A stretch of DNA of 63,528 bases, counting the filler, from Hyphochytrium catenoides (taxonomy: Eukaryota; Protista; Hyphochytriomycota): NCBI GenBank assembly GCA_900088475.1. It is 9 parts of 9 records of this genome, joined end to end, with 100 filler letters (N's around TTAATTAATTAA, not from the genome) between each part and the next. Parts side by side here need not be neighbours in the genome. Positions count along the whole stretch, not along the records: positions 5,650 to 15,481 come from FLMG01003596.1; 8 more parts are not named here. One strand, written 5' to 3'. The position numbers were made by a program, and so were the translations under genes. Below are positions 5,550-16,114 of this stretch, one piece after another. How positions within the stretch are numbered: position 1 is the first letter of the stretch; each line of letters starts with the position of its first letter. A model generated the notes under the pieces. It made no database searches, had not been told where the DNA came from, and was given only the letters and a program-made list of their open reading frames with translations.

Positions 5550-6744
5550 NNNNNNNNNNNNNNNNNNNNNNNNNNNNNNNNNNNNNNNNNNNNTTAATTA
5601 ATTAANNNNNNNNNNNNNNNNNNNNNNNNNNNNNNNNNNNNNNNNNNNNCTTGGGGTCTGATTCACCCTTTTTGCCTCTTCCATTTTTCGCTGCTGTTAT
5701 TGCTGCTCGAATGCCCTCGTCGTATCTGTCATTCCTACAATTCCTGTCTCCTTCCTCCCTACAAGCCTTGTCAGAAGCACGGAGCAGTTCCTCTGTAATC
5801 ATTTTGGACTGCTCTTGAAGGCAATCTGTCCGGATAGGTGTACGATCATGATGACAATATCGTTCTTTCTTTCTCTCAAATGATGCCACGTACGCGCTCA
5901 GCTACTTTAAGGAATCCATATATTTCTTTTAAGTCTCCTTGACTGGGTTGCTTCTTCGTTACCAGTCTTCTACCGTCCTAATCTCTTCTCTGCATGTCTC
6001 AGATGAAGACATCTGCAATCCAGATAAAATCCAGATTGAATTGATCTCTGATAGATCTTCTCACCAGCTGGGTCAAGGACCAAATTCTCATGGTTTGGGG
6101 TGTTACAGTGATAGGCTCATTCTTTCGTTCAAAAGCATTTAATCTCGTAGCTACTTTAGAATTAGGTCTCTTCATAGTGCTGCACAATAGCCTCTGGGTA
6201 GATTCGGGGGAAAAACCGAGGCGTTCAACAGAATTAGGCCGTACCCCAAAATAGGTAAGAAGCAGCTAGGCTTTCTTGGTGTCCGTTTTCCTTTCTTCTC
6301 CTTTCGGTAATTTCTTACTCAAATCTCAATTTTAGGTCTCTCCATAGTCCTGCACAAGCGCTTCTGAGTAGATTCGGAGAATTTCTCTCCTTAGAACCGA
6401 GGGCATCACCAGGATTAGGGAGTACCAAAACTAGATGTACGAAGAAAGTTCGTCTGCCCCTCTTCTGCCCCCGATGTTCTGATGATCTGGTCCTCCTCCT
6501 CTGGCGCCGCAGGGTCTTCGAGTTATAGGAGTTTGGCTTGAGGCTGGCCGCAGCCGCGGCTGCTCTGTGACACTGTGTCCCACAGCGCTTTGGGTCCCTG
6601 AGACAGCCATCTGTTGAGCCTTCATTCAAGCATTTCCAGTATAGGTGACAAGGGAAAAGAGTATAGTTTGCATCGCTCGCAGCTTTGGACGAGAAATCTG
6701 TGAGGTCAGCAACAGAGTTTGGCGCTTACAAGAAGAGACAAATA

Positions 6745-7875
6745 ATGGCAGAAAAGTGGTGTTCAGTAATGCCCAAGGCGGCTACACAGCAGCACGAGTC
6801 TGTGAAGAATTATTATGGCAAAGTCCTAAGCACAACGAAGGATCTGAAGACCAGCGCTTGCACGAATAAAAGCAAGCCAACGAAGGATATCCGCAATATC
6901 CTGAAGCTCATCCCCCACGAGGTCAGGGACAAGTACTATGGCTGTGGGTCAGTTCTTCCAGGTGGGATTGAGAATTCTACCGTGGTGGACCTAGGCTCAG
7001 GCTCAGGCCAAGATTGTTATCTTGCCAGCGCGATAGTGGGGCCGAAAGGCAGTGTCATTGGTATTGACATGACAGATGAACTTTTGGTTACGGCTCGCGA
7101 AAACATCCCGGAGTTTGCCGCCAATCTCGGCTGGTCTCCAAACCTTGAGTTCCGTAAGGGTTTCATAGAATATCTCTCAGATGCTGGCTTGAGGTCAAGT
7201 AGCGTTGACATATGCATTTCCAACTGCGTGCTCAACCTTTCCCCAAGGAAGGATTTGGTGCTGAAGGGCGTCTACGGAATCCTCAAACCTGGCGGGGAGT
7301 TCTTTTTCTCCGACGTCTTCGCTTCCCGACGTCTTCCAGAGGAGCTGAGGAATCATGACATTCTGTTAGGCGAATGCATTGGCGGTGCCCTGTATGTACG
7401 TGACTTCATCCACATCTGCCATCAGGTGGGGTTCGCGGATCCACGACCTATCTCATGCTCAACTATTGAGGTTCAAGATGAGGAGCTTAGCGGTCTGGTG
7501 GGCCCAGCCGTGAAGTTCTACTCGATAACTTTCAGACTATTCAAAGTGGATAACTTAGAGACAACCTGCGAGGACTACGGGCAGATTGCAACGTACAAAG
7601 GAACGATAAAAGGCCATGAGCAGATGTACATTCTGGATGAGAAATATATCTTTGAAGCCCATAAGCCTGTCTTGGTGTGCGGGAACACGGCCACCATATT
7701 GAAGGATACGTACCTCAAGCAGCACTTTGAGCTTGTGGGTGATCGCTCTCGGCACTTCGGGCCGTTCGGGGCCGAAGAAAAAAAAATGATGACCACACCA
7801 TCCCTCTACAGTGCAGCGGGACCCGCAGGAGTCGGAGCCTCGAAAGGAGGTTGCTGCGCATGGGCAATAGAATAG
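6745..7875 (+). CDS. AS3MT: Arsenite S-adenosylmethionine methyltransferase (intronless)
   Basis: Motifs VKNYYGKVL..DLKTSAC, YYGCG, VDLGSGSGQD (SAM binding), ISNCV, GECIGGA, CEDYGQ.A.YKGTI. All four conserved Cys positions are present. First in-frame ATG is 6745. Confidence 0.95.
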   Translation: MAEKWCSVMPKAATQQHESVKNYYGKVLSTTKDLKTSACTNKSKPTKDIRNILKLIPHEVRDKYYGCGSVLPGGIENSTVVDLGSGSGQDCYLASAIVGPKGSVIGIDMTDELLVTARENIPEFAANLGWSPNLEFRKGFIEYLSDAGLRSSSVDICISNCVLNLSPRKDLVLKGVYGILKPGGEFFFSDVFASRRLPEELRNHDILLGECIGGALYVRDFIHICHQVGFADPRPISCSTIEVQDEELSGLVGPAVKFYSITFRLFKVDNLETTCEDYGQIATYKGTIKGHEQMYILDEKYIFEAHKPVLVCGNTATILKDTYLKQHFELVGDRSRHFGPFGAEEKKMMTTPSLYSAAGPAGVGASKGGCCAWAIE

Positions 7876-9070
7876 CTTTGTTTCTAGTGCTTCATCACTT
7901 TCTCTCTTCATAGGCATATTCTTGCTCAGGCTATCTGTCCTATCCGTTGAGCTCCTGCTACCTCGGTGATTGATCACCTTAACTTGTCTCTTCTTTAGTG
8001 CTTCTGCCTCTGTTGTTCACCCTCTGTCCAACTTTTTGGACTAGGAGGGCTTACCTACTCATATGTAATAGCTGGCAAGTTCCTTCAGCTCCCCAGAGAA
8101 TCAGAATGTGGAAGAAGATCCAATCTACTCACCCCGTGTGAAAAGTCCCTGCTGCATCTAACACATAGAGGAACCGACAGTGTATATCAATGTCCGCACT
8201 TTAAGCCGCTGTCCGTGTCTGGTGGATGAGCAGCCTTCAAGCTTCTAATAACCTTTCATCTACGCTCTTCTTAGTCTCTAACTTCCTCGTGCTTTCTCCG
8301 TTCTCCCCGTCCCTTCCCTGCTTCTTGCCTTGTCAATCATCTGCCTCTGTCTGTTGCGCCTCCGCTCCTCTGCAGTAGCACCGCCGCCTCGGGCAACGCG
8401 GCTTCCACATCAGACTCCAGAAGGGGGAGGTTACAAAAACCTTCAGCCCTCCCCCAGGTCTTGTCAACGCTAACCTAACAAGCCGAACCTGACATCCGAA
8501 ATCTAGGAGGCCTTTTTACGCTTTATTCTGAATCTGGCACTTGCCCTTGTCCAGAACGCGGATTTGCCGACATTGCACGAGTCTTTTCTCCCCCCAAAAC
8601 TCTGTCTCTTCTTCTTAGAGCTTTCAGATCTGCACTGTCGGCTTTCTGAAGATCAGGGAACACTCCGTAGACGAGGCTCAGGAGCTAAGAGCGGTAGATA
8701 ATGGCAAGAACTGAGGTGACATTGAAGCAGAGGCAATTATAAAGCTCAGGAGAGGAGAAGATTGACAGCCAGAAAGAACGAGCGAGAGCGCCGGTCAAGA
8801 TCTCATTTTCTCACCCTGGATCATATCTCGCCACTAGCTAGTGCTTGATGTCCCGGGTCCACAGCGCTAGACGACAAAGAGAGGAGGCACCAAGCCCTAG
8901 CCTTGCCGCTTCATACGACTTTTGCTAGTGTCTTTCGCTGTCTTTCCTAGTCCTATTTGGGCCAGCGGCTAAGCAGAGCGCAGAGACTAGGAGGACGAGG
9001 ACTTGAGTTAAACACAGCAGCGCCTGCAAAGAGCAACAGAGCAGGCATAGATCCTGCCAAACAGATAAAT

Positions 9071-11055
9071 ATGGCGACGCGAGACAGAACGTTGTACTTC
9101 GAAAAGGCGCGAAGTGAGGCCAAAAATAAGTCTCTGCGCAGACGGCAGTTGGCCTCAGTGGCAAATGGCGCTCCAGAGGGCAGATCATTGATGAGCGACG
9201 CACAGATGACAGCCTGGGAGGAGGCACGCACAACGCTGCCACCCCAGTACGTTGATACAGTGGAAGTGGTGAATGAGGATGTGCGAAAGATCAAGGACAA
9301 GAGTGAGTGGCTGCTCTCTTAAACGGGCACATCATTGTGCTTCCTGCCCGTGCCTGCTTGCCAACCCACAAACCTTCGTCTTCCTCGCTCTGCAGCTCTT
9401 CAGGGTTATCTTCATGCCTTGTTGTCTGTCTTATCTCATCCCTCTAAGGGCTGTGTTGAATCCTTAATATCTTGTTCTTCTCACCCAATGCCGACTGCGG
9501 CCCATCTTAGATTTCCTACATCTTGTCTCGCTCTCTGCTAACTCCTCCTGACCGTCGATTATTAGTTGAGGAGCTAAACAAGCTGCACACAAAGCGTTTG
9601 ATGGTGAAGTTCGATGACTCGACGACCATTGATGAAGAAAGAGAAATTGAGCAGAAGACGACGGAGATCACTAATCTCTTTCGACATGCAGAGAGGGTGA
9701 GTTGCAAAGGAGAAGTTAAAGCTATTTTTAGTGCCAAGTCGTAGCGCTTAGAGGCAGGATCATGCTATTATGTGCAGTCTCGGCTTTGTCTGGGTTTTCA
9801 GAGTTTGCCTTCGTCTATCTTAGCCGTCACGGACGTTGTTCTAAGTCGTAGGACTCCTCTATGCTGATCTCTTGGCTGCCACGCTACTTGGCTGTTAACT
9901 TCCTATATATGGCTCCTTCTTCTCTCACTCCTGCGCTGCCTTGCCTTGAATTCAGGCTCTGCAACAGGTTGCCACCAAAAATATCAAACAGCTGGTGCCC
10001 TCTGAGCAGAAGATTCGGACCAATATCCAGCGGTCGTTGGCAACCCAGCTCCAAACACTAAGTGCAGAGTTCAGAAGAAGTCAGAAAGAGTATCTCAACC
10101 GTGTCGCACTAGAGAAGAAAGGCCCAGAGGCCTTCGAGTTCTTGGAGAGCGGAGAAAAGGCTCCCCTCGAAATCGATCCGGTTAGTAGATGACAGAGGGA
10201 TATACTGCGGGAACCAGAAGAAAAGAGGGAACAAGCGAGCTTTGTATGGGCAACTGACCAGCCCTTAGATTAGGTTCCTCATTAGCTCTCAGAGACGTGC
10301 GTCGGAAGCTTGATACATACTTTCTGATGGGCACGATGTCTCTTATCGTCTCCTTCCCTTTTTATTCAGGGCTTCACCCAGGAACAGATGGCATCTCTGG
10401 AGTTATCAGAGGCAATCATCAACGAAAGGGATCATGAAATCCAACAGATCGCAAAGTCTATCGAGGAGCTTGCACAGATTTTCAAAGAGCTGGCTGTCCT
10501 TGTCATTGACCAGGTGAGAGAAGTGCTTTCACACAGTCCCAGCATGCTGTCTAAATGAGCCGCTGCACCATCCTTCTTGAACCTCTTGCACAGTTCGTTG
10601 TAATGTGTCCTCTATTCAAGAGGTCAATCACTCTCATTGTATCCTTGCCGGACAAGGGCTCTTGCTGCTCTAACTAGCCTATTGCTCTAAAGGCTGCGCC
10701 GTTCATTGTTCGTCTTAGTATATCTCTTACTTGGTGGCTCTCTCTTTTCGGTTGGCGTTTCCCGACCTCACCTTTCACTCCTCGGTTTGTATTATGGTAC
10801 ATGGTCAGCTCTTGTGCCTGATTCTCGGTCCTGTACAATCTCTCTTACTATTCCGATGCTTGAATGCCACAGGGCACCATCTTGGACCGTATAGACTATA
10901 ATATGGAGCAGGTTGTGGAGCGCACCACAACTGGTTTGAAGGAGCTGGAGACAGCAGAGAAGATTCAGAAGAACAACCGACCTGTGAAATGCATCCTCAT
11001 ACTTCTTGGACTCATCTTCTTCTTTCTAATTTTACTTATTGAGAAACATATGTAG
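9071..11055 (+). CDS. STX16: Syntaxin-16/Tlg2-like Qa-SNARE, 5 exons (9071-9302, 9566-9696, 9956-10180, ~10370-10513, ~10873-11055)
   Basis: MATRDRTLYF N-peptide, LPPQYVD, SNARE motif IFKELAVLVIDQ|GTILDRIDYNME, C-terminal TM helix, GT-AG introns. Confidence 0.93.
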
Positions 11056-11759
11056 ACTGTAAGGGATCCCCCTAGAGAGGGGAGAGGGCTTATGGCGCCA
11101 ACTTGCTTCCGAGGATAAAGGAGAGGATCAGCAGCAGAGGGAGGGGAGTGAACAACGGGGGCAAAGGGTAAAGAGAGCTATGCATGTATATGAGGTTTGT
11201 CTAGGTACAGAAAGAGCCGCCATCTGTCCATCTCTTCCAAGATATCCTCCCATTGGTGAGATGGTGGGCTGTCCAATCTCGGGCCTTCACCGAAGGTCCA
11301 GTGGACCCTTACACCAGCAGTACAAGCGGCGATAATGTTATAAACTGAACCCTCCCAGCTTCCTATTTTGTTCCAAGCTCTCCTTACTCTCTCTCGTCTG
11401 TGCCATCTTTCTCAGGGGCGCACAGGTCCCATTCTCTAAGTGGCTACCCCTAGAGCGGAAGTCTTGCTTCTCTTTAAATAACCGCTAAGCTCACCAGTGG
11501 GTGACGAGCTTCCTCAGAATCGTACGTGTCTTTGTAAGGTCTCTCGAAGACAGTGAGTTCTCTTAAGGCTCAAATAGGCAGTCAATAATTTGCCTCCTAG
11601 AGCATCCATCACCACATCGGGCTAGACAGATTGATAGACAGCCTTCCACCGATTGGAAGATTTCATAAGCCGAACGAATGACGAAGCAGCGCTTCTTTTG
11701 TTATTTGTCCTAAAAGTTTCATCTACGTGAGGTCTCTCTTTCTCTCTACCTCTCTGTCT

Positions 11760-14700
11760 TTATCTCTCATTTGCAAGCGCTGTCTCAGTAGGAGTGGCCA
11801 GCTCTACCACTTCTGTCCGTCCTTCAGCAGCTTGCAGTGCCTTCTTGGCACTGTTGGCTCTGTCCACCTTCCAAAGACCTCTAAGAGCGGCCACTCGGTA
11901 CGCTTCGGCCAGTGTTGGATAGTTAAACACTGCGTTTCTGAAATAATCTATCGTTCCGCCTGTAGACATCACGATCTGGCCAATATGAATGATCTCAGTG
12001 GCACCTTCTCCAATCGCATGGACCCCGAGAAGCTAAAGAATGGGATTGAAAGGGAAAGGAAAAGCATCATGTCAGTAGTGTTTCACTGCTGATTTAAAAG
12101 AAAGAGAGCTTATGCGTCAAAAAGGACCCTCCGCCCAATGACTGAGGGCCGCACGTAATAAAGCACGGTGAACAGGCCAAAAATGAGTTCTTGTCCAAGC
12201 AACGATGAGGGTGAGAGAAGAGAAGTAGAAGAAAGCCAAGGTTGCGCCACAAGCATGCACATAATGGTTAGCAGTCGAAGAAGAGGAGGTTTCTTGACGA
12301 GCAGTGGGTAAGAGGAACATAGATCCCCCCAATCCACCACTCCTGATAAGAAAGATAAGAGACTTCGGCGCTGGTACCTCCAACGTATGAGGGCAAAAGA
12401 TGATCTTCAAGAAGCCTGGCGTTCCGCCCAACATCTGCCCGCGCGCTAGGTCCTCATACCGTGCCACACCCACCTTAAGGAATACGAGGTATACGAGATG
12501 AAAGAGCAGGTCACAGTTAGACAAGAAGTGAAGAAAGAGGCAGCAGAGACCCGCTACGGTTGCAGCCGCTAAAGATGCCTGTTCGCTTTCACAACCATAC
12601 GATGCGGTCATTGTTCCCCTGTCCCACTCCCGCTAAAATTTCAGACAGAGCCCTTTCTAATCTACTTAGACTTACCTCATAGGGTCTGTTCTCTGCCGTC
12701 AGTGCCTGCTCAGACTTGCCGACCATGGAGATCTCAGGGATAGTGTAGATGCCAAAGGGAAAGAGGTTGCCGGATCTGAGACAACAGGGAAATCTCAGGA
12801 GCGGTGCAGATGCATCTCATCCATGGTCGTTCAGCCCTCGCATATGACTCACACTCTAAGCTTTCTGTCTCCTGTCACCCTTATCTGGAGGCAGTCAACC
12901 CCATGTCCCCCTTCCAGAGAACCTCTCTCAATCCGCTTATAAAGTCTAAGCGTCTACTGTACAGGTGTCCCTTCGCTCTTGGCAGCCACCTACCGCAGCC
13001 TCGTTCTGACCCTCTCGCTCTCGTATGGCTCCTTCAGTTCTTTCCTCTGCTCCTCCTCAGAGTGACTCCACATGTGGACCGAGGCCTGTCGACCTTGTTC
13101 CATCGAGGTAGAAGCTACATTTATCAGTTAGTGCGGTTAGTAGCGAAGCATAACGACTGAGCAGTAGCACGTTTCCTACCTAGAGCTGGGAATCCGATGC
13201 AGTCTCCGGCGGCATAGCTTACAGAAAAGAGAGTTAGCCGCGCTAGTTGGCAGAGTGTGAGAAAGACACTCCGTATGAGCGAAAAGGCAAGGGGAAAGGA
13301 GCGTAAGGTTGGAGGTAACAGAGAACCAAGACCGCTTAAGAGGCAGAAAGGGAGAAAGGCTCACATATGAGGCACATTCGTCTGATAGTTGTCGTTAACT
13401 TCAATGATGCCGCGGGGGTTGCATTTAATTCCCACCGCGGGCAGATTCAGGGAATCAGAGTTGGCCTAGCATGGAAATGATTGTGTGAGGGAACCATAGA
13501 CATCGCGTTCGTCCATTATCTCTATCTTCTTTTGCATCGTCGCTCCCTATCTTGCTCTCTAAGTCTTCCTCCTCCATTACCAGTCTTACCTGTCGTCCCA
13601 CGCAGTAGAGCAAAGCATCTCCGTATATCTGTTTACCACTGGCCAACTCCACTATTACCCCGTCACCATCTCGCTGAGGATAAAAGAATTCGGCAGATGT
13701 AGAGGAGAAAGAAGACGAGCGACAAAGCAAAGAGTGGTCAGAACGTGATGCCTTGGCTCGGCCAGGTAATGCCAGGTCTATAGAGAGAACGAAGAGAAGC
13801 TGCTACACGGAGCAGACGGACTCACCGCCACTTTGCTGAGCTGCTCTCCCAGAATAAATCTGGCTCCCTGTTGCCTCATATGATAAGCTAAGGCCTCCGT
13901 CACCTCACGGTCTGCAAAGTCTAGCACCTGAAAGGAGAAGAGAGAAAGAAGCATTAACGTCTATCCACCAGCACTTTCGCTCCTAGAACTTCCTGCTTTC
14001 ACCTTCCTTCTCTTTATCTACACACACACAGCGCTTTCACTCCTTCACTGTGTGGCTGACTCCGCTCACCCATTTGACTGCTCTATTCGCTTACCGTCTC
14101 CTTGGCGTCAATGATGGTGACATTGCAAGTAGGCAAGATGTTCAGCATGGAAGCGTATTCCATTCCTATAGGACAGAGGTGTTAGAGATTGATTAACGAT
14201 AGTTTCCCATGAGGACGTCAAAGGGAGAGGCAAGCTTTCCGGAGGGAGTATTGCTGCTGTTTCCTAGACCAGTAAGATAGAAGCCAGGCGGAACGAGGAA
14301 GATCTATGGCATGACCAAGATACAAAGAGCTGTGAACGACAGGAGGAGAAGAACTCAATGGCGCTGAGGTGCAAGAGATATAGGAGAGGTAATATTCAGC
14401 CATTCGGTAGGAGTCTCGCCACTAACTGACCAATAACGCCTGTGCCCACCACAATCAGCCTGCGGGGAATCTCTTTGAAGCCTCTGCCCCACAACAGCTG
14501 GTCGCTGAGGACAGACGAACGAACGTCAGGGGTAACGTATAGAAGAGTAAGGCCAAGACCAGACTAGGAAGTCAGGAAATTGGTGATCAAGCTCTGTCAT
14601 GTGCATCGAGAGCAAGGATCCTAAAGATAGTGGCAGATCTGATGCAAGCGGCAAGACGAAGTAGCAAGTAGAAGGAAAGAGCGAAACGGAGAGAGAGACA

Positions 14701-15361
14701 CAGAGAGAGGACAAGGCCCCATCAAGGCACCTTACCTATCAAAGATCTTCTCCCCATCGAAAGGAATATCGGGTCGGTGGGCTGGGCGAGTGCCGACGGC
14801 GATAAGAAAGTTGTCCGCCGTCAAAATTCTGTGGAGACAAAGTGGGAGAGGCCAAGAACAGCATTAACGAAAGAAGTACTATGGAGAGAGTAGGTGATCA
14901 AGAGCCATCCCACTCAAAAAGAGGATGAGATAAGTATAAGACGGATAGGCACTTGCGAAAGTCCTGATCCCAAGGACGATGTTACTCAATACAGAGCCAG
15001 AGGGGAGAGCCGTGGAAGAGAGAGAGAGGAGGGAGAGGATGACGGAGAGAGCAAGGAACTCTAGAGCAAGGAACTAGAGCAAGGAACAAGGGAACTAGAG
15101 CAAGGAACAAGGGAGCAAGGATAGAGAGAGAAGAGAGAGAAAGGAAAGAGAGAGAGGGAGAAAGAAAGAGACGGAGGGTGATCGAAGAGCATGACGCAGA
15201 GCCGCAGGAAGAGGCATTAATACCTCTTGCAGACGTTTGAGGTGAGATGTCGAGTGCAGTCCGTGTCATTGACGATTGTGTCGTTCTCCAGCACCGCCAG
15301 AGTCTTCTTCTCTGGATCCTCCAGGAAACGCCCAGAACCCGTGATGAGGGTTATCCCGTTT
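11760..15361 (-). CDS. sthA: Soluble pyridine nucleotide transhydrogenase (SthA/UdhA-like), 5'-truncated, 12 visible exons
   Basis: Spliced product includes [80 protein letters not shown] and [15 protein letters not shown]. Confidence 0.92.
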
Positions 15362-16114
15362 CTTCAGTAGGTAAAGGAACCAAACGATGAGAAATGCCCC
15401 GAAAACCAAGGACGGAGAGCGAGAGATGGAGACCAAAGAGGGAGAGGGGCGGAGAGAGAGAGAGAGAGAGGGGGAGAGAGANNNNNNNNNNNNNNNNNNN
15501 NNNNNNNNNNNNNNNNNNNNNNNNNTTAATTAATTAANNNNNNNNNNNNNNNNNNNNNNNNNNNNNNNNNNNNNNNNNNNNAGGTCGTCGCATCTCTAAA
15601 GTGAAACAGTTTATTAAACGCCGTCCTCAGCTTGTGCCGACACATCCCAAGCTTGCCCAGTGATCCACCGTCACGATAGTACAATGGCTCCGCCTTTATT
15701 GTTGGAGTCGATTAGTGCAAGAGCTTTATCCTCTTCACTCTTCTTCTTGTCGCTCTGGGAAGATGTGGACTGGTGTGAACCTTATGTCTCCTCGTTTGGT
15801 GACGGAGCTAAAAGTCCTCCTTCCGGAGATCGATAGACCAAGATGAAGGCGATGAGGAGGGCAGCTGCTTTCATTGTCATTCGTACTGGCCTCGCATGTC
15901 CTTGAAGAAGGGAAAGGAGACTTCACATAGCTCCATACAATCTCCATCATTTTTGACAATGTCTGCTTTCCTGGGTTCTCCATCTTCCGGCGTCACATGC
16001 CAGATAGCATCCGCATCCAGGATTCTTCTTGCAGTAGCTAGACTATCATCCCTGCAGATCTGCCTCGCTTCCCCTTCCGTTCCTGTGCAGACACCATGGG
16101 GCACGATTCCTTCA

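What the first reader, a model, noticed from the sequence alone, without database searches (positions are those of the whole stretch)
11760..15361. Bacterial-type soluble transhydrogenase domesticated with at least 11 spliceosomal introns
Seen: 12 GT-AG exons assemble a flavoprotein ending [15 protein letters not shown], with YPT in place of the HPT of lipoamide dehydrogenase and glutathione reductase. It sits on the same scaffold as eukaryotic STX16, so it is not contamination. Known: SthA/UdhA is characterised as a bacterial energy-independent NADPH/NADH balancing enzyme, whereas eukaryotes typically use membrane-bound NNT. Inference: an old horizontal acquisition giving a little-studied redox-balancing route in a protist.
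Basis: partly seen in the sequence, partly recalled or inferred. Interest (0 to 1): 0.7.

Follow-up and report, generated by a model that had tools for sequence, protein, structure and literature searches.

The report
Intron-rich eukaryotic soluble transhydrogenase (SthA) gene
This is a real, intron-split nuclear gene for a bacterial-type soluble NAD(P) transhydrogenase (SthA family), but similar genes are already annotated in many other protists, so it is an ordinary member of a little-studied eukaryotic gene family.

Summary
On the minus strand, 12 exons (15361 to 11763, stop TAA at 11762-11760) are joined by 11 canonical GT-AG introns. They encode the C-terminal 430 residues of a flavoprotein ending [15 protein letters not shown].

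- **Family:** exon by exon, ten of the eleven stretches scanned match NCBIfam NF003585 (SthA), nine of them best; the last exon scores 88 bits, against 29 for MerA and 26 for lipoamide dehydrogenase.
- **N-terminus:** the missing three exons lie on another contig of the same genome (C4113). The splice phase fits, giving a 15-exon, 584-residue protein.
- **Motifs:** both SthA hallmarks are present (CxxxxT and YxxxxE), plus a basic, acid-free N-terminal extension that looks like a mitochondrial presequence.
- **Tree:** the protein sits inside SthA (98/98) and far from Lpd and Gor.
- **Eukaryotic context:** introns, a Tlg2/STX16-like SNARE gene on the same contig, and intron positions shared with Saprolegnia genes rule out contamination.

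The reading as a special domestication does not hold. Eukaryotic SthA genes form one clade (100/99) spanning oomycetes, brown algae, raphidophytes and EukProt entries that I take to be opisthokont protists and Rhodelphis. Many are already auto-annotated as EC 1.6.1.1. This genome carries three paralogues and also the membrane NNT. I found no biochemistry for any eukaryotic member.

The parts
15362..15481 (-). 3' part of intron 3, cut by the contig end. It ends in the acceptor ...ctactgaAG and begins in a (CT)n microsatellite.
   Evidence: The contig C1777 ends at window 15481. Acceptor phase 2 matches the phase-2 donor of the last exon on contig C4113.
15224..15361 (-). Exon 4 of the gene (first exon in the window): (R)[19 protein letters not shown]...TSNVCKR
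   Evidence: It aligns with P0002 and E. coli SthA. The NCBIfam scan of this stretch gave no SthA match, only a weak GroES hit.
14736..14828 (-). Exon 5: [30 protein letters not shown]
   Evidence: NF003585 positions 135-165, E 1.9e-5.
14431..14504 (-). Exon 6: [26 protein letters not shown], holding the second Rossmann GxGxxG for NAD(P)H
14095..14165 (-). Exon 7: [23 protein letters not shown]
13826..13927 (-). Exon 8: [34 protein letters not shown]. The donor is ambiguous between 13826 and 13822.
   Evidence: NF003585 positions 210-247; two equal-scoring junctions.
13590..13673 (-). Exon 9: [28 protein letters not shown]
13365..13465 (-). Exon 10: [33 protein letters not shown](I)
   Evidence: NF003585 positions 273-306, E 2.9e-7.
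13180..13217 (-). Exon 11 (38 nt): [12 protein letters not shown], followed by a 65-nt intron that paralogues B and C lack
12994..13114 (-). Exon 12: [16 protein letters not shown] plus a charged insert ([24 protein letters not shown]) that bacterial SthA lacks
12676..12775 (-). Exon 13: [33 protein letters not shown] (start of the dimerisation domain)
   Evidence: NF003585 positions 343-381, E 9.5e-12; Pyr_redox_dim.
12378..12473 (-). Exon 14: [32 protein letters not shown]
11760..12032 (-). Exon 15: [19 protein letters not shown]...[21 protein letters not shown], a 34-residue non-conserved tail, then stop TAA (11762-11760). It holds the YxxxxE motif.
   Evidence: NF003585 88.4 bits, MerA 28.8, Lpd 26.4; PDB 9n4y SthA 54 bits, LPD 31.8.
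12033..15223 (-). Span holding the 11 complete GT-AG introns: 15223-14829, 14735-14505, 14430-14166, 14094-13928, 13825-13674, 13589-13466, 13364-13218, 13179-13115, 12993-12776, 12675-12474, 12377-12033
   Evidence: donors are GTA/GTG/GTC and acceptors are pyrimidine-rich ...AG. Lengths are 395, 231, 265, 167, 152, 124, 147, 65, 218, 202 and 345 nt.

Best explanation
The window holds exons 4-15 of a 15-exon nuclear gene. Exons 1-3 lie on contig C4113 of the same assembly. The gene encodes a 584-residue FAD flavoprotein of the SthA/UdhA family (soluble, energy-independent NAD(P)+ transhydrogenase, EC 1.6.1.1).

Inferred mechanism, by homology with E. coli SthA: FAD accepts a hydride from NADPH (or NADH) and passes it to NAD+ (or NADP+) with no proton-motive force. 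The family's single Cys-Thr pair (CxxxxT) and the Tyr-Glu pair replace the redox disulfide and His-Glu dyad of disulfide reductases, so no thiol substrate is reduced.

The roughly 45-residue basic, acid-free N-terminal extension suggests import into mitochondria. There the enzyme would equilibrate the NADPH and NADH pools beside the proton-translocating NNT that the genome also encodes.

The gene belongs to an old eukaryotic clade of bacterial origin and is the orthologue of oomycete 'paralogue 1'.

Shown: gene structure, family membership by sequence, motifs, phylogenetic position, eukaryotic residence. Inferred: catalytic activity, direction of flux, oligomeric state, mitochondrial location, expression.
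For: - Exon structure and frame. Phase-consistent join to C4113, giving one ORF of 584 codons.
- Ten of the eleven stretches scanned match NF003585 colinearly (profile positions 135-464), nine of them as best hit.
- PDB best hit is the SthA entry 9n4y.
- Identity is 56.5% to a bacterial SthA, 43.5% to E. coli SthA, and 26-27% to Lpd and Gor. The alignment shows GGVCVHTGT (CxxxxT), GSGPAA, GTGVIG and FNYPTLAE (YxxxxE).
- These are the two motifs that the literature uses to separate STH from flavoprotein disulfide reductases: PMC9460512.
- Careful ML tree: SthA against Lpd/Gor 98/98; eukaryotic clade 100/99; window protein with oomycete paralogue 1 at 98/91.
- Three intron positions are shared with Saprolegnia genes of both paralogue types.
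- The first 36 residues have no Asp or Glu, with 4 Arg, 1 Lys and 8 Ser (sequence). Other eukaryotic homologues also carry Arg-rich N-terminal extensions that bacteria lack.
- PntB/NNT is present in the same genome.
- An SthA homologue was detected as protein in Nannochloropsis: PMC7554720.
Against: - No eukaryotic member has been assayed, so activity is inferred from about 44-57% identity and two motifs.
- No RNA run could be listed, so splicing, expression and the join across two contigs are unverified.
- The join rests on phase, colinearity and matching (CT)n contig ends.
- Targeting is judged from composition only; no predictor was available.
- The protein has inserts absent from bacterial SthA (a charged loop in exon 12 and a 34-residue C-terminal tail) whose effect is unknown.
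- With three paralogues in the genome, one or more may have changed function.
Confidence: 0.75

Rival explanations
1. It is an SthA-family flavoprotein whose eukaryotic clade, or this paralogue, has shifted activity. It might act as an NAD(P)H oxidase or diaphorase, or as an NAD(P)H:quinone reductase, rather than a true transhydrogenase.
For: E. coli SthA already has a side oxidase activity that releases H2O2 (PMC9460512). There are three paralogues at about 55-67% identity, which leaves room for new functions. The eukaryotic clade has its own inserts. NCBIfam holds neighbouring families such as NAD(P)H-quinone dehydrogenase NF005883 (a weak hit on one exon).
Against: Both STH-defining motifs and both nucleotide-binding motifs are intact in all three paralogues. 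The SthA model outscores every other family on nine of the ten exon stretches that match it. Branch lengths in the eukaryotic clade are not unusually long for paralogue A (0.37, against a median of 0.46).
Confidence: 0.15
2. It is a non-functional or unexpressed copy (a pseudogene), or a mis-assembled chimaera of two paralogues across the contig gap.
For: The gene is broken over two contigs. No RNA evidence was obtainable. The genome has other paralogues that could supply the function.
Against: The reading frame is uninterrupted over 15 exons, with canonical splice sites. All invariant family residues are kept. A 66-residue fragment from another public assembly (P0001) is 81% identical, including the non-conserved tail, which implies purifying selection in a relative. 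The other two paralogues have their own copies of the exons in question, so the C4113 exons are not theirs.
Confidence: 0.05
3. It is a dihydrolipoamide dehydrogenase, glutathione reductase or other class-I disulfide reductase that was misread as SthA.
For: The fold and Pfam domains are the same (Pyr_redox_2, Pyr_redox, Pyr_redox_dim). Some oomycete homologues carry the NCBI name 'dihydrolipoyl dehydrogenase'.
Against: The second redox Cys is Thr and the catalytic His is Tyr. Identity to Lpd and Gor is 26-27%, against 44-57% to SthA. It is separated from Lpd and Gor at 98/98. HMM scores are 88 bits against 26.
Confidence: 0.01
4. It is bacterial contamination of the assembly, or a very recent transfer.
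For: The family is bacterial in origin, with 56% identity to Acidobacteriota-type SthA.
Against: It has 14 spliceosomal introns. A SNARE gene and a protist-type arsenite methyltransferase lie on the same contig. Its nearest relatives are oomycete genes (66-68% identity). Intron positions are shared with Saprolegnia.
Confidence: 0.01

Closest known systems
E. coli SthA/UdhA and the Pseudomonas and Azotobacter STH (EC 1.6.1.1; NCBIfam NF003585; PDB 9n4y)
   Same: Colinear over the whole bacterial protein. Same FAD and NAD(P) GxGxxG motifs, CxxxxT and YxxxxE motifs, and dimerisation domain. Identity is 43.5% to E. coli and up to 56.5% to Acidobacteriota-type SthA.
   Different: It is nuclear and has 14 introns. 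It has an N-terminal extension of about 45 residues (putative presequence), a charged insert of about 25 residues after ...VHMW, and a 34-residue C-terminal tail. Its oligomeric state (octamer or filament in bacteria) is unknown. It has not been assayed.
Oomycete 'NAD(P)(+) transhydrogenase (Si-specific)' paralogue 1 (for example Pythium insidiosum GLD96277.1 = P0002, Saprolegnia parasitica SPRG_12054 = P0172)
   Same: Orthologues. Identity is 66-68%, sister at 98/91 in the tree, with the same insert region. Three intron positions are shared with Saprolegnia.
   Different: Oomycete genes have 0-6 very short introns (41-54 nt in Saprolegnia), against 14 introns of 65-395 nt or more here. This genome has an extra close paralogue (B) of this type.
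Brown-algal and other ochrophyte SthA-like genes (Ectocarpus P0193, Chrysoparadoxa P0195, Nannochloropsis W7T7X5)
   Same: Same eukaryotic clade ('type 1', 99/96). They are also intron-rich (10 and 14 introns). A protein product was seen in a Nannochloropsis proteome.
   Different: No intron position is shared with the window gene (0 of 10 and 0 of 14). Ectocarpus has a much longer acidic insert.
Dihydrolipoamide dehydrogenase and glutathione reductase (flavoprotein disulfide reductases)
   Same: Same fold and the same three Pfam domains.
   Different: CxxxxC is replaced by CxxxxT and HxxxxE by YxxxxE. Identity is 26-27%. It sits in a separate clade.
Proton-translocating NNT/PntAB (EC 1.6.1.2; now EC 7.1.1.1 by my recollection)
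   Same: [quoted passage not shown]
   Different: An unrelated membrane protein coupled to the proton gradient. It is encoded separately in this genome on contig C454.

Membership tests
SthA / soluble pyridine nucleotide transhydrogenase (STH, NF003585) | CxxxxT motif in the FAD domain in place of the redox-active CxxxxC (PMC9460512) | tested here: met
   GGVCVHTGTIPSK on exon 2 (contig C4113) aligns with E. coli SthA GGGCTHWGTIPSK, against Lpd GGVCLNVGCIPSK. The motif lies outside the window, on the contig joined by inference.
SthA / soluble pyridine nucleotide transhydrogenase (STH, NF003585) | Tyr replaces His of the C-terminal His-Glu pair (YxxxxE) | tested here: met
   FNYPTLAE at window 11763-12032, against Lpd HAHPTLHE and Gor AIHPTAAE.
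SthA / soluble pyridine nucleotide transhydrogenase (STH, NF003585) | Two GxGxxG dinucleotide-binding motifs (FAD and NAD(P)H) and a Pyr_redox_dim domain | tested here: met
   GSGPAA (C4113 exon 1) and GTGVIG (window exon 6). Pfam Pyr_redox, Pyr_redox_2 and Pyr_redox_dim hit exons.
SthA / soluble pyridine nucleotide transhydrogenase (STH, NF003585) | Whole-protein score above the curated NCBIfam cut-off (465 bits) | not tested
   Ten exon stretches match the model, colinear over profile positions 135-464; their bit scores sum to about 268, and nine have it as best hit. The cut-off is tuned to bacterial equivalogs.
SthA / soluble pyridine nucleotide transhydrogenase (STH, NF003585) | Groups with characterised SthA and apart from Lpd and Gor in a tree | tested here: met
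   Careful IQ-TREE run of 58 rows. The SthA clade includes E. coli SthA at 98/98, with Lpd, Gor and the genome's own Gor-like ORF as outgroup.
SthA / soluble pyridine nucleotide transhydrogenase (STH, NF003585) | [quoted passage not shown] | not testable with these tools
   This needs an enzyme assay (thio-NAD+ or thio-NADP+).
Flavoprotein disulfide reductases (Lpd, Gor, MerA) | Redox-active CxxxxC disulfide and a His-Glu dyad | tested here: not met
   The second Cys is Thr and the His is Tyr.
Spliceosomal-intron-bearing nuclear gene | Frame restored only by removing GT-AG introns; eukaryotic neighbours; transcripts spliced | tested here: inconclusive
   GT-AG introns and frame restoration are met. 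Eukaryotic neighbours are met. Spliced transcripts could not be checked, because no RNA run was listed.

The most novel reading that the evidence does not exclude
Eukaryotes of several supergroups (stramenopiles, and the EukProt entries I take to be opisthokont protists and Rhodelphis) inherited one bacterial SthA, of Acidobacteriota-like type. It duplicated early into two types and is targeted to mitochondria. That would give these lineages an unrecognised, energy-independent NADPH/NADH valve working beside NNT. Pseudofungi would retain introns older than the duplication, and the three paralogues here would be partly specialised.
Probability: 0.3. Interest if true: 0.5.

Novelty: new member of a known kind. 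Interest (0 to 1): 0.3.

Why it matters
Textbook accounts, and the reviews read here (PMC4518329, PMC9460512), treat the soluble transhydrogenase as a bacterial enzyme and NNT as the eukaryotic one. This gene is one more well-supported case showing that many protists carry SthA-type genes in the nucleus. They are often present in two or three copies and probably serve the mitochondrion.

That bears on models of redox balance in oomycete pathogens and oleaginous algae, and it offers a clean old example of a bacterial gene that later gained many introns. The family is already auto-annotated widely, so the remaining value is in doing the missing biochemistry and localisation, not in the discovery of this locus.

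Tried and rejected
- **Coccidian origin.** My first guess, from GC content and GA repeats, was a coccidian genome. I dropped it. The neighbour ORF's best named hit is Plasmodiophora and the SthA is sister to oomycetes. The genome statistics (4759 records, introns of about 200 nt) fit the Hyphochytrium catenoides assembly (4758 scaffolds plus the mitochondrion; PMC5795050). This identification is an inference, not a test.
- **RNA evidence.** The look-up of sequencing runs listed none.
- The spliced 584-residue model has no reference, so it was never sent to a search, family scan, fold prediction or atlas tool. Exons were searched singly by reference. No whole-protein HMM score, structure prediction or targeting prediction was therefore made.
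- **Literature.** Searches for eukaryotic STH biochemistry or HGT reports found only bacterial work and one proteome table.
- **Ancient introns shared across stramenopiles.** I tested whether introns are shared with brown algae as evidence of antiquity. None is. Sharing is limited to Saprolegnia.
- **Quick trees.** The quick trees were superseded by the finished careful tree.
- **Tree sampling.** Sequences left out of the final tree were most bacterial hits and most loci, kept to a sample of 23 bacterial rows. The bacterial sister group is therefore only loosely defined. It is also biased by the search patterns.
Full report
**Observation.**
The piece (window 5650-15481) is the whole of contig C1777 (9832 bases) of a 61.0-Mb, 4759-contig genome. 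On the minus strand between 15363 and 11763, twelve stop-free stretches carry peptides colinear with a class-I flavoprotein.

I enumerated every GT/GC donor and AG acceptor between neighbouring stretches. I kept those that preserve the frame and scored them against the Pythium orthologue P0002. This gave one clear best junction for each of the 11 gaps, all GT-AG with good consensus. The exception is the exon 8/9 boundary, where two pairs four bases apart score equally.

- **Exons:** 15361-15224, 14828-14736, 14504-14431, 14165-14095, 13927-13826, 13673-13590, 13465-13365, 13217-13180, 13114-12994, 12775-12676, 12473-12378, 12032-11763.
- **Stop:** TAA at 11762-11760.
- **Introns:** 65-395 nt.

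**Family.**
I scanned eleven stop-free stretches singly by reference.
- Ten match NCBIfam NF003585 (Si-specific NAD(P)+ transhydrogenase, SthA) in colinear order over profile positions 135-464. It is the best hit for nine of them.
- The last exon scores 88.4 bits, against 28.8 for MerA and 26.4 for lipoamide dehydrogenase.
- Pfam sees only the generic Pyr_redox, Pyr_redox_2 and Pyr_redox_dim domains.
- Among solved structures the best match of the last exon is 9n4y, 'soluble pyridine nucleotide transhydrogenase' (54 bits). Dihydrolipoyl dehydrogenases follow (31.8 bits or less).

**Missing N-terminus.**
A search of the window's own genome with NF003585 found N-terminal exons at the end of contig C4113 (locus L011).
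- The three exons are L011 724-949, 1505-1650 and 1789-1880.
- They encode MLQLLSSAHSCALRGKRALSRSPSVSRFLSM...NFDLVVIGSGPAAQKCAIDSAKRG / KKVAVVDKRALQGGVCVHTGTIPSKTFREAIIHLTGYRHKGFYGNSAQ / PLRRIGVSDILDRVKKVEHVETDIVRDQLL(R).
- The last exon ends in a phase-2 donor (CTCAG|GTCAGT). The window's first exon starts with a phase-2 acceptor at 15361. Together they make the Arg codon of ...DQLLRNGITL..., which matches ...HQLLRNGVEL... of P0002.
- On the sense strand both contigs end in (CT)n, so the assembly broke in a microsatellite inside intron 3.
- The joined model, built only in a local script, is one ORF of 584 codons in 15 exons.
- An in-frame TAA lies three codons before the ATG.

**Hallmark residues.**
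- FAD motif GSGPAA.
- GGVCVHTGTIPSK, that is CxxxxT. E. coli SthA has C..T; Lpd and Gor have C..C.
- NAD(P)H motif GTGVIG.
- FNYPTLAE, that is YxxxxE. Lpd has HAHPTLHE.

Partipilo et al. (PMC9460512) give exactly these two substitutions as what distinguishes STHs from flavoprotein disulfide reductases. They show that the Cys and Thr are needed for efficient, well-coupled transhydrogenation.

Identity of the model is 65.9% to Pythium paralogue 1, 57.3% to Ectocarpus, 56.5% to a Blastocatellia SthA, 43.5% to E. coli SthA, 25.9% to E. coli Lpd and 26.9% to Gor.

**Relatives.**
The last exon was searched against 1.84 billion cluster representatives. It found 1623 proteins, many of them short exon-sized fragments, plus full-length proteins.
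- The nearest named full-length protein is from Pythium insidiosum. UniRef calls its cluster 'NAD(P)(+) transhydrogenase (Si-specific)', and Heterosigma has the same name.
- A word search with that Pythium protein shows the family in every oomycete genus listed, usually as two paralogues about 57% identical to each other.
- It also appears in Ectocarpus, Undaria, Ascophyllum, Chrysoparadoxa, MMETSP transcriptomes and EukProt entries 'Nk52', 'Clim' and 'Rmarinus'. From memory I read these as Chromosphaera, Corallochytrium and Rhodelphis.
- Bacterial SthA follow at 52-55% identity.
- A scan of bacterial genomes puts the closest ones (50-55%) mostly in Acidobacteriota, with Krumholzibacteriota, Gemmatimonadota, Binatia and others. 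The scan patterns bias this list.

**Tree.**
This was a careful IQ-TREE run (LG+C20+F+G4 PMSF, 58 rows, 513 columns). Supports are ultrafast bootstrap / SH-aLRT.
- SthA-like sequences, including E. coli SthA, separate from E. coli Lpd, Gor and the genome's own Gor-like ORF at 98/98.
- All eukaryotic rows, plus some unnamed metagenomic ones, form one clade at 100/99. It nests in a poorly resolved group of Acidobacteriota-type SthA (93/96).
- The stramenopile sequences split into a 'type 1' clade (99/96) and a 'type 2' clade (99/91).
- The window protein (A) is sister to oomycete paralogue 1 (98/91). A second paralogue of the genome (B, contig C4384) lies just outside (99/87).
- A third paralogue (C, contigs C4171 and C960) lies in type 2, with oomycete paralogue 2 and Heterosigma.
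- Rows for B and C are my own approximate models.

**Introns as a clock.**
I mapped exact intron positions for Ectocarpus (10), Chrysoparadoxa (14), Saprolegnia parasitica type 1 (4) and S. diclina type 2 (6) from their genomic loci. I compared them with A (14), B and C on one alignment.
- Three positions with identical phase are shared between this genome and Saprolegnia across both types:
  - AKET^VLDF (phase 0): A, B, C and Saprolegnia-1.
  - VGRQ^ANSD (phase 0): A and both Saprolegnia genes.
  - NVPH^IYAAGD (phase 2): A, B, C and both Saprolegnia genes.
- C shares PTLAE^AYRV with Saprolegnia-2, which independently supports the orthology of C with type 2.
- Two more positions are shared only among A, B and C.
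- The ochrophyte genes share no position with the window gene A or with Saprolegnia; the only overlap is one position common to paralogue B and Chrysoparadoxa.

So the gene has lived in nuclear genomes since before the hyphochytrid/oomycete split, and apparently before the type 1/type 2 duplication. Why the brown-algal genes of type 1 lack those introns remains unexplained. It could be loss with regain elsewhere, or parallel insertion in the pseudofungi.

**Context.**
- The same contig carries a 396-residue single-exon arsenite-methyltransferase-like ORF at 6685-7875 (+). It has protist-wide homologues; the best named hit is Plasmodiophora at 60%.
- It also carries a multi-exon Qa-SNARE gene at 8951-11052 (+). 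Pfam SNARE scores 58 bits. The best natural PDB match is Tlg2, the yeast syntaxin-16 orthologue.
- The genome also encodes a PntB/NNT on contig C454 (406 bits). SthA is therefore an addition to NNT, not a replacement.
- The record count (4759 = 4758 scaffolds + the mitochondrion), the size, the intron length and the sister position to oomycetes fit the published Hyphochytrium catenoides assembly (PMC5795050). This is an inference.

**How it most likely works.**
By homology, the enzyme is an FAD-dependent, energy-independent hydride shuttle between NADPH and NAD+. In bacteria it usually runs towards NADH when NADPH is in excess (PMC4518329).

The N-terminal 36 residues have no acidic residue, 4 Arg, 1 Lys and 8 Ser. 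They precede the point where bacterial proteins start, and other eukaryotic homologues have similar Arg-rich extensions. I therefore infer a mitochondrial matrix location. Activity, direction, oligomeric state and location are all untested.

**Novelty.**
The gene is a sound new instance of a family that databases already label in dozens of eukaryotes and that was seen as protein in Nannochloropsis (PMC7554720). I found no paper characterising any eukaryotic member, nor one discussing its origin. Hence the verdicts: observation confirmed, interpretation partly supported, interest low to moderate.

**Limits.**
- No RNA run was listed.
- The contig join, the start codon and the models of paralogues B and C are inferences.

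Noticed in passing
window 6685-7875 (+): An intronless 396-residue ORF with a SAM methyltransferase domain and a C-terminal Cys pair. Its homologues are named arsenite methyltransferase. The best named hit is Plasmodiophora brassicae (60% identity), with wide distribution in protists and algae.
   Followed up: partly
window 8951-11052 (+): A multi-exon Qa-SNARE gene of Tlg2/syntaxin-16 type. It has the N-terminal peptide MATRDRTLYF..., a SNARE domain (Pfam 58 bits) and a C-terminal membrane anchor. Exon boundaries were not worked out.
   Followed up: partly
G000:C4384 about 70350-75020 (-) (L017); G000:C4171 (-) plus C960 (+) (L019, L018): Two further SthA-like paralogues sit in the same genome, both with CxxxxT and YxxxxE. 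B is 67% and C about 60% identical to the window protein over the aligned parts (55% in the tree alignment). Paralogue C is also split over two contigs, and C4171 has a run of N after its N-terminal exon.
   Followed up: partly
G000:C454:12249-13806 (-) (L107, L108): A proton-translocating transhydrogenase beta domain (PF02233, 406 bits) lies in a 623-residue open frame. The genome therefore has NNT as well as three SthA genes.
   Followed up: partly
window 15362-15481 and L011 1881-1937: The gene is broken between two contigs exactly in a (CT)n/(GA)n microsatellite inside intron 3. Such repeats are very common in this genome: one search lists 73 matches, nearly all of them to the repeat-rich parts of the query.
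   Followed up: no
L021 (Ectocarpus FN649751.1), L106 (Chrysoparadoxa), L104 and L105 (Saprolegnia): Intron positions of SthA genes are shared between this genome and Saprolegnia across both paralogue types. None is shared with the intron-rich ochrophyte genes of the same clade, except one position common to paralogue B and Chrysoparadoxa. Whether this is loss or parallel gain is unexplained.
   Followed up: partly
P0193 (Ectocarpus siliculosus) in the alignment: The annotated Ectocarpus protein lacks the conserved segment ...VPYEVGVARYEE... between two exons. This looks like a gene-model error in the public annotation.
   Followed up: no
G000:C3930:18227-19669 (+) (L004): An intronless 581-residue open frame groups with E. 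coli glutathione reductase (100/99). It has a long Ser/Arg-rich N-terminal extension.
   Followed up: no
G000:C251:11173-11781 (+) (L005): A 218-residue open frame scores 170 bits on the SthA model over profile positions 258-460. It is probably the genome's lipoamide dehydrogenase or another relative. It was not classified.
   Followed up: no
whole genome G000: The 4759 records, the 61-Mb size and the ~200-nt introns match the published Hyphochytrium catenoides assembly (FLMG01000001-FLMG01004758 plus the mitochondrion). The identity of the organism is inferred only.
   Followed up: partly
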